A stretch of 64,000 nucleotides of DNA from Octopus sinensis (lineage: Eukaryota), in NCBI RefSeq assembly GCF_006345805.1, contig NC_043001.1:128588001-128652000 (forward strand), in the 5' to 3' direction. Made by a program: the position numbers and the translations under genes. Of this stretch, positions 3,713 to 60,239 are shown piece by piece. Below the pieces are notes generated by a model. The model worked only from the letters and a program-made list of their open reading frames with translations, searched no databases and had not been told where the DNA came from. Position 1 is the first letter of the stretch; each line of letters opens with the position of its first letter.

Positions 3713-3905
3713 TTCTTGTTTCTTTATTGCCCTCAAGGGGCTAAACATAGAGGGGACAAACAAGAACAGACAAAGGGATTAAGTCGATTACATTGACCCC
3801 AGTGCGTAACTGGTACTTTATTTATCGACCCCGAAAGTTTGAAAGGCAAAGTCGACCTCGGCGTAATTTGAACTCAGAACGTAATGTTTCTGCCAGCTTG
3901 CCACC
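3713..3905 (-). mobile_element. SINE family C, internally deleted
   Basis: Core gaggtcgactttgcctttc...ggggtcgataaa.aagtaccag; tail aagaaatagg. Confidence 0.8.
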
Positions 3906-4096
3906 TTATATATGTATATATTTCTGGGAGTGCATGCATATATGTGTATTTGCTTCCAGTGCCAAAAAATATTTTTGCTAAAACAGGCTGAATGTCCAGT
4001 CAGCCAGGCTAAGTTATCAGTGTCCAAACACTTGTGCCCAGTTGTCTCATTATGTGCTTCAAGACCTTATTAAAAGGTTAGCAGATGTTCTGGACC

Positions 4097-4134
4097 ATCG
4101 CTTCTCGGCCTTTTGGCTAAGATCAAAGTGTAGT
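4097..4134 (+). ncRNA. U2: U2 snRNA 5' segment (nt 1-38) of a disrupted U2 gene/pseudogene
   Basis: atcgcttctcggccttttggctaagatcaaagtgtagt is the canonical U2 5' end up to the branch-point recognition sequence (GUAGU). Confidence 0.95.
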
Positions 4135-4486
4135 GACGCCGTGGTGATCTCATTCTTGCTCACAACATCATAAGCGGAAAGTGTAACCTCTCGAAAGAGC
4201 TGTTCTTCACTCCTGCTCCAGAGCGTCGGCTGCGGGGTCATTCCGCAAAGCTCTATCTGCAACGATTTCATCTCAATCGAAGGAGAGGGGCTTTCTCCGT
4301 CCGGGTTGCGGATCCATGAAATAAGCTGCCGGATGAGATAGTGATGCCGACGACTGCTCGGTTCAAAGTCTCCCTTGACCAGAAATGGCCTGAACTCTTT
4401 ACATGAACACCACCCTGTACATAACTCCATGTCCCCCTACATGGCCTTGCTGTTTGCTTTTTGAGCCAAAAAATTAACCAACTAAC
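4135..4486 (+). mobile_element. CR1-clade LINE 3' fragment, (TAAC)n-tail family, inserted in U2
   Basis: Translates RRGDLILAHNIISGKCNLSKELFF...RLRGHSAKL...FSVRVADP*NKLP...FKVSLDQKWPELFT*, a CR1 ORF2 C-terminus. Tail ttaaccaactaac. Confidence 0.88.
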
Positions 4487-4615
4487 TGATACGGCTCCTA
4501 CCTGGGGCCATCGATATTAAACTGATTTTTAGAACAAGGTGAAGTGTTAGAGGTCTGCTCCGCCTTTGCCACGGGTTGGCCTGGTATTGCAGTGCTTCCA
4601 GGATTCAGCCCATCT
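4486..4615 (+). pseudogene. U2: U2 snRNA 3' segment (about nt 62 to the end) of the same disrupted U2 copy
   Basis: ctgatacgg...atattaaactgatttttagaac (Sm site) ...gggttggcctggtattgcagtgcttccagg (stem-loop IV with ATTGCAGT loop), closely resembling invertebrate U2. An A-run follows at about 4632-4644. Confidence 0.9.
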
Positions 4616-5226
4616 CCCACCCGGGAGATACAAAAAAAAAAAAGGTATTTTAACCCTTAGCAAAATAAAAATTTAACCTTTTAGCTTTTAATCCATAAAG
4701 CACTGGGATTTGCAATTACATAACACGGACTGCTAAGCACATTTTATGAAAATGAGACTACCATAAAAGACAAAAAAACAAAAAATAGTTAAAATATCTT
4801 CTTAGTATATAATGGTGGCAAGTTTTATATCATCTGAAGAGTCATTAGTTGAACTATTAGTCCTTTTGCATTCTGGTGGGTATCGGAGCATTTGAGTGAC
4901 ATTAGATCCCAACAAACACCCATAAATTAAATGCATTTATCTGGGCCACGATCGTGGCCTGTCAACCTGTGCCTGACTGCTATGATCGTGGCCTGTTGTG
5001 CTTTATGTGTTAATCCAACCATATCCAGCCTAAATATTTTACTTGTTTTATGTTCAACCTGGCCAGATTTGGCTTCTTACTCCTACTCCAGATTGTCATT
5101 TTAAAAATAAATAATCATGTTATCGAAATCTCAAAGCTACAAGATAATACGTAATTAATTGAAAACAATGTGAATAAATAAGCATTACATATGACAGAGT
5201 CATCCAAATACTAAAAAGGCTAAAAA

Positions 5227-59876: not shown

Positions 59877-59907
<31 letters not shown>

Positions 59908-60239
59908 ATTTGGCTCAAAAGCAAATAGCAAGGCCATGTGGGGGGACATGGAGTTAAGTACAGGGTGGTGTTCATGTAAAGAGTTCAGGCCACTTGAGGT
60001 CAAGGGAGGCTTTGAACAAAGCGGTCGTCAGTATCTTCACCATCTCGTCTGGCAGCTTGTTCCACGGATCCGCAACCCGGAGCTTCTTTCAGTTTCCATC
60101 TACCAAATCCACTCACAAGGCTTTGGTTGGCCCGAGGCTATAGTAGAAGACGCTTGCCCTAGGTGCCATGCAGTGAGACTGAACCCGGAACCATGTGGTT
60201 GGTTAGCAAGCTACTTACCACACAGCCACTCCTGCGCCT
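59612..60239 (-). mobile_element. SINE family B hosting the CR1 insertion; other interrupted B copies at 37032-37910 (+), 55545-57135 (-) and 57697-58400 (-)
   Basis: B halves are contiguous once the insert is removed. Confidence 0.85.
59879..60081 (-). mobile_element. Second copy of the (TAAC)n-tail CR1 family, 5'-truncated, inside a SINE B copy
   Basis: Reverse complement gives RVADPWNKLPDEMVKILTTALFKASLDLKWPELFT*, the same 3'UTR and a (TAAC)n tail. 7-bp TSD gcttctt at 59872-59878 and 60082-60088. Confidence 0.9.

What the first reader, a model, noticed from the sequence alone, without database searches (positions are those of the whole stretch)
4097..4645. U2 snRNA split by a CR1-clade LINE at U2 nt 38, near the Utopia/Keno target site
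Seen: U2 nt 1-38 (4097-4134) joins directly to a CR1 ORF2 C-terminus, 3'UTR and (TAAC) tail (4135-4486). The sequence then resumes as U2 from ctgatacgg through the Sm site and stem-loop IV. About 22-23 nt of U2 (atctgttcttatcag...) are missing and there is no TSD. Known: the NeSL-related RLE element Utopia and the Tx1-clade element Keno insert into U2 genes, at about nt 37-38 as I recall; CR1-clade elements are generally regarded as non-site-specific. Inference: this could be a third, independent U2-associated retroelement lineage, or a U2/LINE chimera in which the 5' junction was resolved on U2 RNA or DNA. Caveat: the only other copy of this family in the window (59879-60081) sits in a SINE, so any specificity is at most partial.
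Basis: partly seen in the sequence, partly recalled or inferred. Interest (0 to 1): 0.85.

Follow-up and report, generated by a model that had tools for sequence, protein, structure and literature searches.

The report
LINE fragment inside dead U2 copy
A dead, reverse-transcribed copy of the U2 splicing RNA in an octopus genome is interrupted by the tail end of a very common CR1-like jumping element; this is an ordinary nested insertion (or a one-off copying chimera), not a new retroelement that targets U2 genes.

Summary
U2 nt 1-38 (4097-4134) joins a 352-bp 5'-truncated LINE 3' end (4135-4486). U2 then resumes at nt 59-63 and runs to its end (4618), followed by 13-16 nt of U2-gene 3' flank and an A13 run.

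The interpretation as a U2-associated lineage fails:
- The LINE is a generic CR1-like family with more than 2000 candidate copies.
- 29 other copies all have unrelated flanks.
- The junction is unique in the 2.7-Gb genome.
- The LINE's 3' junction, the one set by target-primed reverse transcription, lies about 21 nt downstream of the Utopia/Keno site.
- The U2 copy lacks the U2 genes' conserved upstream flank, so it is a processed retropseudogene, not a gene.

Best reading (0.65): an ordinary LINE insertion into an older U2 retrocopy, with loss of 20-24 nt.

Rival (about 0.2): one multi-template retrocopy. In its favour, U2 nt 36-40 proved to be the recurrent 3' limit of at least 34 dispersed short U2 5' fragments. 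Some have target-site duplications and some head 5'-truncated SINE or LINE copies. This is the class known from mammals as 3'-truncated snRNA pseudogenes.

The scan had already noted U2-LINE/SINE chimeras elsewhere in this genome.

The parts
3740..3905 (-). tRNA-type SINE copy upstream; context only, not part of the structure
   Evidence: Read directly. The same SINE family is seen in L063, L076 and elsewhere in the window.
3911..4055 (.). Old dispersed repeat that ends about 40 nt before the U2 piece; context only
   Evidence: 449 candidates at 73-85% identity. All hits stop at query position 134-167, i.e. by about window 4061 at the latest.
4072..4078 (+). Weak candidate for the upstream copy of a 7-bp target-site duplication (AAAAGGT), preceded by TT
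   Evidence: the only shared 7-mer between 4031-4092 and 4619-4720. It could be chance. If real, 18 nt of unexplained filler (4079-4096) precede U2 nt 1. A 16-mer taken from this filler region (4077-4092) is unique in the genome.
4097..4134 (+). U2 snRNA nt 1-38 (stem-loop I and the single-stranded linker up to the branch-point-recognition GUAGU)
   Evidence: 38/38 identical to own-genome U2 genes. Rfam U2 40.2 bits in the relaxed scan. The upstream flank is unlike the U2 gene flanks.
4135..4406 (+). 5'-truncated CR1-like LINE: last ~90 codons of ORF2, in frame from 4137; internal stop at 4317-4319 where relatives have Trp; natural stop at 4404-4406
   Evidence: Longer relatives carry RVT_1. 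The C-terminal region is 39% identical to bird CR1-type protein fragments. The 5' end falls at the same base as copy L018.
4407..4473 (+). LINE 3' UTR
   Evidence: Aligned to 29 relatives. The whole 352-bp piece is 3.4-3.9% from their majority sequence.
4474..4486 (+). LINE microsatellite-type tail (TTAAC, CAAC, TAAC). The last 4 nt (4483-4486) could equally be U2 nt 59-62 with one mismatch.
   Evidence: Relatives have (TAAC)n or (TTAAC)n tails of varying length.
4487..4618 (+). U2 snRNA nt 63 to the 3' end (3' strand of stem IIa, stem-loop IIb, Sm site, stem-loops III and IV)
   Evidence: Rfam U2 59.8 bits. 10/147 differences from the nearest U2 genes. Three of these are pairing-preserving changes in stem IIb that are shared with a U2 copy at C28:7666393-7666415.
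4619..4634 (+). 3' extension identical to the first 13-16 nt downstream of real U2 genes (pre-U2 3' trailer)
   Evidence: Comparison with 29 U2 gene loci.
4632..4644 (+). A13 run taken as a poly(A) tail (the first 3 A may be templated by the gene flank)
   Evidence: In U2 genes this region is A/T-mixed, so 4 T-to-A changes in 16 nt would be needed to derive it from the gene flank. Another U2 retrocopy, L111, also carries a poly(A).
4640..4646 (+). Weak candidate for the downstream copy of the 7-bp target-site duplication (AAAAGGT)
59886..60081 (-). Second, shorter copy of the same LINE family, in a SINE, with a 6-bp target-site duplication (CTTCTT on the + strand)
   Evidence: 90.9% identity to LINE reference positions 1666-1861. 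The SINE sequence is continuous across the insertion.

Best explanation
This is a two-step relic with no function.

Step 1. A 3'-extended, adenylated pre-U2 transcript from a U2 variant with an altered stem IIb was reverse-transcribed by a poly(A)-using LINE machinery. It was inserted here as a full-length U2 retropseudogene.

Step 2. Later, a copy of an abundant, non-site-specific CR1-like LINE integrated into that dead copy by target-primed reverse transcription. Its (UAAC)n RNA tail was primed at the TATCTGATA stretch of U2 (nt 59-67), which resembles the tail. Reverse transcription stopped at the family's usual 5'-truncation point, about 352 nt from the 3' end. The cDNA was then joined to the upstream DNA after U2 nt 38, with loss of 20-24 nt. 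The lost segment lies between two copies of the U2-internal direct repeat TATCTG.

Shown: the anatomy, the retropseudogene nature of the U2 copy, the generic nature of the LINE, and the uniqueness of the junction.

Inferred: the order of events, and that the 5' junction formed on DNA and not on U2 RNA.
For: The LINE family is generic.
- More than 2000 candidate copies exist. The best 29 are 95-96% identical, most continue upstream into ORF2, and each is followed by different DNA.
- The second copy in the window sits in a SINE.
- The junction 24-mer is unique in the genome.

The LINE copy looks like any other truncated copy.
- Its 5' end falls in a cluster of 5' ends at reference positions 1487-1504, shared by 6 other sampled copies. 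L018 ends at the identical base.
- The 3' junction shows tail/target resemblance (TAAC against TATC), as in relatives whose tails run into TGAC- or TAA-like target DNA.

The U2 copy is a single processed retrocopy.
- The two U2 pieces are collinear, in one orientation, and lack only 20-24 nt.
- It carries the pre-U2 trailer plus A13 and lacks the conserved U2 promoter flank.

The frequency is as expected. By my own pairing of the coordinates of the 5' and 3' U2 seeds, this was the only locus of roughly 60 with a large insert. I estimate that about one such case is to be expected in a genome this rich in repeats.

The ages are compatible. The LINE piece is 3.4-3.9% from its relatives' majority sequence. 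The U2 3' part is 4.8-6.8% from its source.
Against: The 5' break falls on a hot spot.
- 27 of 34 sampled short U2 5' fragments end at nt 36-40.
- Some of these fragments are heads on 5'-truncated sense-strand retroelements: a SINE in L076 and an RTE-like LINE in L099. That is the same architecture as the window's 5' junction.

The U2 3' piece starts close to where three 5'-truncated U2 retrocopies start, at nt 56-58 (L126, L120, L119).

In the two cases where this LINE family's target change could be read, it was 0-6 bp and not a 20-bp deletion.

The 5' U2 piece has 0/38 differences, while the 3' piece has 7-10/147. This is weak evidence, P about 0.07-0.15.

There is no microhomology at the 5' junction.

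No empty or intermediate site could be examined.
Confidence: 0.65

Rival explanations
1. The whole block 4097-4644 is one multi-template retrocopy made in a single event.
- Reverse transcription was primed on the A-tail of a pre-U2 RNA.
- It ran to the loop of stem IIa (about nt 59-63).
- It jumped to the 3' end of a CR1-like LINE RNA and copied 352 nt to that RNA's usual 5' end.
- It then re-entered U2 RNA at its favoured single-stranded entry point, nt 36-40. This could be the still-tethered 5' part of the first template or a separate U2 5' fragment. It ran to nt 1.

On this reading the LINE was never inserted into U2 DNA.
For: All three junction positions are recurrent ends of retro-copied RNA in this genome.
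- U2 nt 36-40: 27 of 34 short fragments.
- U2 nt 56-58: 3 of the 20 3'-seed U2 loci fetched.
- LINE reference positions 1487-1504: 7 of 30 copies, counting the window's own.

U2 heads on a 5'-truncated SINE and on another LINE family exist.

Internal template switching onto single-stranded snRNA segments is documented in mammals (PMC4476161).

Earlier scan notes report multi-template U2-SINE-SINE and U2-LINE-tail retrocopies in this genome (not re-checked here).

The divergences of the three parts are statistically indistinguishable.
Against: It needs three templates, with U2 used twice, in the right order and orientation. No second example appeared:
- None of the 34 short-fragment loci has a U2 3' part within about 600 nt.
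- None of the 5'-truncated U2 copies has a head upstream.

A poly(A)-primed enzyme would have to jump onto the tail of a LINE of the kind that recognises its own 3' end (my assumption for CR1-like elements; not tested here).

The only flanking duplication is a weak 7-mer, and it leaves 18 nt unexplained.

My rough expectation counts favour later insertion by between 1:1 and 100:1.
Confidence: 0.2
2. A U2-headed LINE chimera (U2 nt 1-38 added by template switch at the end of an ordinary LINE insertion) landed by chance directly upstream of an older, 5'-truncated U2 retrocopy.
For: U2-headed 5'-truncated elements exist. 5'-truncated U2 retrocopies starting at nt 56-58 exist.
Against: It requires an insertion exactly at the 5' edge of a U2 fragment, in the same orientation. 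By my rough estimate the chance is of the order of one in ten million per insertion, and there are only some tens of U2-headed insertions.
Confidence: 0.02
3. The LINE belongs to a lineage with a real, if partial, preference for this U2 site, i.e. a third U2-targeting family beside Utopia and Keno.
For: The 5' junction lies within 1-2 nt of the Utopia/Keno site. The U2 sequence at the 3' junction resembles the LINE tail.
Against: 0 of 29 other copies have U2 flanks. The junction is unique. None of the 34 short-fragment U2 loci is followed by this family in the local comparison, and no other of roughly 60 paired U2 loci carries a large insert. For target-specific LINEs the fixed point is the 3' junction, which here is about 21 nt downstream. 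The target is a dead retrocopy.
Confidence: 0.02

Closest known systems
Nested LINE insertion into a processed snRNA retropseudogene (the U/poly(A) class, Group III of Doucet et al. 2015, PMC4476161)
   Same: A U2 copy with a 3' A-run, no promoter flank and a candidate short duplication at a TT/AAAA-like site. It is later interrupted by a 5'-truncated non-LTR element with a small target alteration.
   Different: The retrocopy derives from a 3'-extended precursor. The host is a cephalopod, where the responsible poly(A)-using LINE is unidentified. The loss of about 20 nt is larger than the 0-6 bp seen for two other copies of this LINE family.
snRNA/LINE chimeric retrocopies made by template switching (U6/L1, U5/L1 and U3/L1 chimeras; SINEU heads; PMC4476161, PMC4494074)
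   Same: A 5' snRNA piece joins, in sense orientation, directly to a 5'-truncated LINE 3' end. The snRNA break lies in a single-stranded segment, as reported for U5 and U3.
   Different: The LINE's 3' flank here is the rest of the same snRNA, which classical chimeras do not show. The partner is CR1-like, not L1.
Utopia (NeSL-related, restriction-like endonuclease) and Keno (Tx1 clade): U2-gene-targeting LINEs (PMC4640811)
   Same: An interruption of U2 close to the branch-point-recognition sequence.
   Different: Those elements have a precise 3' junction, with U2 resuming at standard nt 39, and most or many of their copies lie in U2 genes. Here U2 resumes about 21 nt further on, the family is dispersed with unrelated flanks, and it is CR1-like by similarity.
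3'-truncated ('tailless') snRNA retropseudogenes (Schmitz 2004 and Doucet 2015, as cited in PMC4476161 and PMC4494074)
   Same: The dispersed octopus U2 fragments start at nt 1-14 and end at nt 36-40. Several have 8-13-bp duplications, and the truncation falls in a single-stranded segment.
   Different: They occur in a mollusc and cluster very tightly on a single site. They also serve as heads on SINE, RTE-like and possibly CR1-like copies, so more than one LINE machinery or a discrete U2 5' RNA fragment may be involved.

Membership tests
U2-targeting non-LTR retrotransposons (Utopia / Keno type) | Many or most copies of the family are flanked by U2 gene sequence | tested here: not met
   0 of 29 other sampled copies have U2 flanks. 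The junction is unique in the genome. The second copy in the window lies in a SINE.
U2-targeting non-LTR retrotransposons (Utopia / Keno type) | A precise 3' junction, with U2 resuming at standard nt 39 | tested here: not met
   U2 resumes at octopus nt 59-63, about 21 nt downstream. The site is defined in PMC4640811.
U2-targeting non-LTR retrotransposons (Utopia / Keno type) | Restriction-like endonuclease (Utopia) or Tx1-clade AP endonuclease/RT (Keno) | tested here: inconclusive
   Only the RT and C-terminal part could be read, and they resemble avian CR1.
CR1 clade of LINEs | RT and ORF2 C-terminal region group with CR1 elements | tested here: inconclusive
   RVT_1 is present in relatives. 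Identity to bird protein fragments is 39-43%; I take these to be CR1-derived because CR1 is the dominant bird LINE (my knowledge, not tested). The conserved LERVQ...SLEKRR.RGDL block is aligned. No phylogeny against L2, Rex1, Jockey or RTE was made.
CR1 clade of LINEs | Short 3' UTR ending in a microsatellite-like tail rather than poly(A), with small or no target-site duplication | tested here: met
   (TAAC)n or (TTAAC)n tails in all 30 copies. Target changes of 0-6 bp in two readable cases.
Processed poly(A) snRNA retropseudogene | Homology limited to the transcribed region, with no gene promoter flank | tested here: met
   The upstream flank differs from the two conserved classes of U2 gene upstream flank. 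Downstream homology stops 13-16 nt after the RNA end.
Processed poly(A) snRNA retropseudogene | 3' A-run and flanking target-site duplication | tested here: inconclusive
   An A13 run is present. The only duplication is a 7-mer, AAAAGGT, at a TT/AAAA-like site, and it leaves 18 nt of filler.
Template-switch snRNA/LINE chimeric retrocopy | snRNA piece joined in sense to a 5'-truncated LINE 3' end, the whole flanked by one target-site duplication in non-snRNA DNA | tested here: inconclusive
   The first half is met. The 3' flank is the rest of U2 and not unrelated DNA, and no duplication specific to the head+LINE unit exists.

The most novel reading that the evidence does not exclude
The block is a single retrocopy in which a reverse transcriptase left a U2 RNA at the stem IIa loop, made an excursion onto a CR1-like LINE RNA, and re-entered U2 at the branch-point-recognition segment. 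The same entry point, or a discrete U2 nt 1-37 RNA fragment, would generate the dozens of short U2 heads and TSD-flanked mini-copies scattered through the octopus genome and joined to several LINE/SINE families. That would point to a LINE-family-independent route by which the 5' domain of U2 is fed into retrotransposition. Possible routes are RNA cleavage plus end-to-end template jumping, or RNA ligation.
Probability: 0.15. Interest if true: 0.45.

Novelty: new member of a known kind. Interest (0 to 1): 0.2.

Why it matters
As a candidate third U2-targeting retroelement lineage it would have been notable, but that reading fails. What remains is an ordinary relic.

Its one point of wider interest is that the break at U2 nt 38 is not random in this genome. 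It coincides with a sharply defined class of 3'-truncated U2 retro-fragments and U2-headed chimeras. This extends to a cephalopod, and to non-L1 elements, the mammalian observation that snRNAs are captured at single-stranded segments.

Tried and rejected
Cross-species or population test of the empty site.
- The look-up of sequencing runs on the flank listed runs of six coded organisms.
- A run search with the LINE/U2 3' junction (4445-4545) listed none. This shows nothing about absence.

Other attempts that led nowhere:
- An exact-protein look-up of a flank ORF (4931-5101) found nothing on record.
- The 18 nt between the candidate duplication and U2 nt 1 are not from a multicopy RNA. A 16-mer taken from this region (4077-4092) is unique and there is no Rfam hit.
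- Pfam on the L099 piece gave nothing. Its RT motifs were read by eye.

Readings I rejected:
- A source U2 gene already carrying the LINE, because the junction is unique.
- A U2-headed SINE family, for the same reason.
- A pre-existing slippage deletion between the TATCTG repeats. L082 looked like an example but aligns better as a different 20-nt deletion.

Full report
**What is there**

- Window 4097-4134 is U2 nt 1-38, identical at all 38 positions. Octopus U2 genes have one extra A, so nt 38 here is standard nt 37.
- At 4135 the sequence switches without overlap to the 3' end of a LINE, which runs to 4486.
- In frame from 4137, the LINE piece encodes the last ~90 codons of ORF2. It has one internal stop (4317-4319) and the natural stop at 4404-4406. 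A short 3' UTR follows, then a 13-nt tail of TTAAC, CAAC and TAAC units (4474-4486).
- U2 resumes at 4487 (nt 63) and runs to the end of the Rfam model at 4618 (59.8 bits). It may resume at 4483 (nt 59) if the last TAAC is read as U2 TATC with one mismatch.
- Between 20 and 24 nt of U2 are absent.
- U2 contains the hexamer TATCTG twice, at nt 38-43 and nt 59-64. The lost segment is essentially one period of this repeat.

**The U2 copy is a retropseudogene**

Twenty-nine U2 gene loci share two conserved classes of upstream flank and a conserved downstream flank.

- The window's upstream flank matches neither class.
- Downstream, the window follows the gene flank for only 13-16 nt (4619-4634). 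An A13 run (4632-4644) follows.
- Deriving that run from the A/T-mixed gene flank would need four T-to-A changes in 16 nt, against about 5-7% divergence in the U2 body.

I therefore read it as a poly(A) tail on a 3'-extended precursor.

The 3' part differs from the nearest genes at 10 of 147 positions. Three of these are pairing-preserving changes in stem IIb that recur in an uninterrupted U2 copy at C28:7666393-7666415. They are therefore inherited from a variant source, and the post-insertion divergence is nearer 5%.

A 7-mer, AAAAGGT, preceded upstream by TT, occurs at 4072-4078 and 4640-4646. It is a weak candidate target-site duplication and would leave 18 unexplained nucleotides before U2 nt 1. 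A 16-mer from this region (4077-4092) is unique in the genome.

**The LINE is a generic CR1-like family**

- A genome search with 4135-4486 gave more than 2000 first-look candidates. The 29 best other copies are 95-96% identical.
- Most continue upstream into ORF2, and their 3' tails abut 29 different sequences. None has U2 on either side.
- Relatives carry RVT_1.
- The ORF2 C-terminal region is 39-43% identical to bird protein fragments, which I take to be CR1-derived. It is labelled 'jockey' in Octopus vulgaris.
- The window's copy is 3.4-3.9% from the majority sequence of its relatives.
- Its 5' end falls in a cluster of 5' ends at reference positions 1487-1504. Six other sampled copies share this cluster, and L018 ends at the identical base.
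- The second copy in the window (59886-60081, minus strand) lies in a SINE with a 6-bp duplication.

**Test of site specificity**

- The 24-mer across the U2/LINE junction occurs once in the 2.7-Gb genome, even with two mismatches allowed.
- For Utopia and Keno the fixed point is the 3' junction, with U2 resuming at standard nt 39 (PMC4640811). Here the 3' junction, the one set by target-primed reverse transcription, is about 21 nt further downstream.
- I paired the coordinates of 5' and 3' U2 seeds myself. This was the only locus of roughly 60 with a large insert.

The 'third U2-associated lineage' reading is therefore not supported.

**An unexpected complication**

A search for the U2 5' piece followed by a non-U2 base, and then for a 17-mer from nt 14-30, turned up many loci that hold only a short U2 5' fragment.

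- Of the 43 loci I could read, 34 are such fragments. They start anywhere from nt 1 to nt 14, and 27 of them end at nt 36-40.
- Several are bracketed directly by 8-13-bp duplications (L091, L093, L095, L105, L106).
- L076 is such a head on a 5'-truncated, sense-strand SINE inside an (ATT)n microsatellite.
- L099 is a head on the RT region of a different LINE, which looks RTE-like by eye.
- The end point lies in the single-stranded linker between stem-loop I and stem IIa, at the branch-point-recognition sequence (structure line).

This is the class described in mammals as 3'-truncated snRNA pseudogenes, together with internal template switching onto single-stranded snRNA segments (PMC4476161; PMC4494074).

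Earlier notes of this scan report further U2-LINE and U2-SINE chimeric retrocopies in the same genome. I did not re-check them.

**Weighing the readings**

The window's 5' junction has exactly the architecture of a U2-headed chimera. Three 5'-truncated U2 retrocopies start at nt 56-58, close to where the window's 3' piece starts.

A single-event, three-template retrocopy is therefore conceivable: A-tailed pre-U2 down to about nt 60, then the LINE RNA from its tail, then U2 from nt 38 to nt 1.

Against the single-event reading:
- No second U2-X-U2 locus appeared among the 34 fragments or the 5'-truncated copies.
- It needs U2 twice in one event.

For an ordinary later insertion:
- About one interrupted U2 copy per genome is expected at this repeat density (my estimate).
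- The LINE copy has the family's usual 5' end.
- The 3' junction shows the tail/target resemblance expected for priming on DNA.

The cost of the later-insertion reading is a coincidence of roughly 2-10% that the upstream break falls in nt 36-40. It also needs a deletion larger than the 0-6 bp seen in two other copies.

The divergences do not separate the models: 0/38, 3.4-3.9% and 5-7% for the three parts.

A chimera landing by chance next to a truncated U2 copy is negligible.

I put later insertion at 0.65, the single-event chimera at about 0.2, and a real target preference at about 0.02.

**What could not be done**

No full-length LINE, no further U2 fragments and no C28 variant could be fetched.

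**Verdict**

The site-specific interpretation is refuted. The object is an ordinary, non-functional nested retro-insertion or, less likely, a one-off multi-template retrocopy.

The side observation of a sharply bounded U2 5'-fragment class in a cephalopod is a new instance of a known phenomenon.

Noticed in passing
Loci L063, L065-L073, L075-L081, L085, L089-L101, L103, L105, L106 (own genome, dispersed): At least 34 short U2 5' fragments start at nt 1-14, and 27 of them end at nt 36-40. Some have 8-13-bp target-site duplications directly at their edges. Others are fused to a 5'-truncated sense SINE (L076) or to an RTE-like LINE RT region (L099). Only 100 of the 137 exact 17-mer hits were listed, so the true number is higher.
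   Followed up: partly
L003, L005, L013, L015, L018, L021 and window 4135: The 5' ends of copies of the CR1-like LINE cluster within 18 nt (reference positions 1487-1504, about 352-370 nt from the 3' end). This is either a truncation hot spot or a short non-autonomous derivative of the LINE's 3' end.
   Followed up: partly
L122 (G000:C10:100192262-100193462): A 97.5%-identical U2 copy begins at nt 41, preceded by unrelated sequence. That is 1-2 nt from the Utopia/Keno 3' junction. What lies upstream was not examined.
   Followed up: no
L066 (G000:C12460:4938-7962), just upstream of the U2 fragment: A sequence ending in a CTAACTAAC-type tail lies 12 nt upstream of a U2 nt 4-38 fragment. This could be a U2-to-LINE-tail template jump or a chance neighbour. 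It has no match among the sequences held locally.
   Followed up: partly
G000:C28:7666376-7666467 (minus strand): An uninterrupted U2 copy shares the window copy's pairing-preserving stem IIb changes (C-G and U-G in place of U-A and C-G). This suggests a variant U2 gene lineage as the source of the retrocopy. It could not be fetched.
   Followed up: partly
G000:C3:19698341-19734058 and C7:25264272-25388337: U2 genes stand in loose arrays with two distinct classes of conserved upstream and downstream flanks. L111 is a 5'-truncated U2 retrocopy with a poly(A), and many others are tailless.
   Followed up: no
window 59886-60081 (minus strand): A second, 197-bp copy of the same LINE family with a (TAAC)n tail is inserted in a SINE with a 6-bp target-site duplication.
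   Followed up: yes
window 4059-4430 (minus strand): A 123-codon open frame runs antisense through the LINE piece, the 5' U2 piece and the upstream flank. It is probably fortuitous.
   Followed up: no
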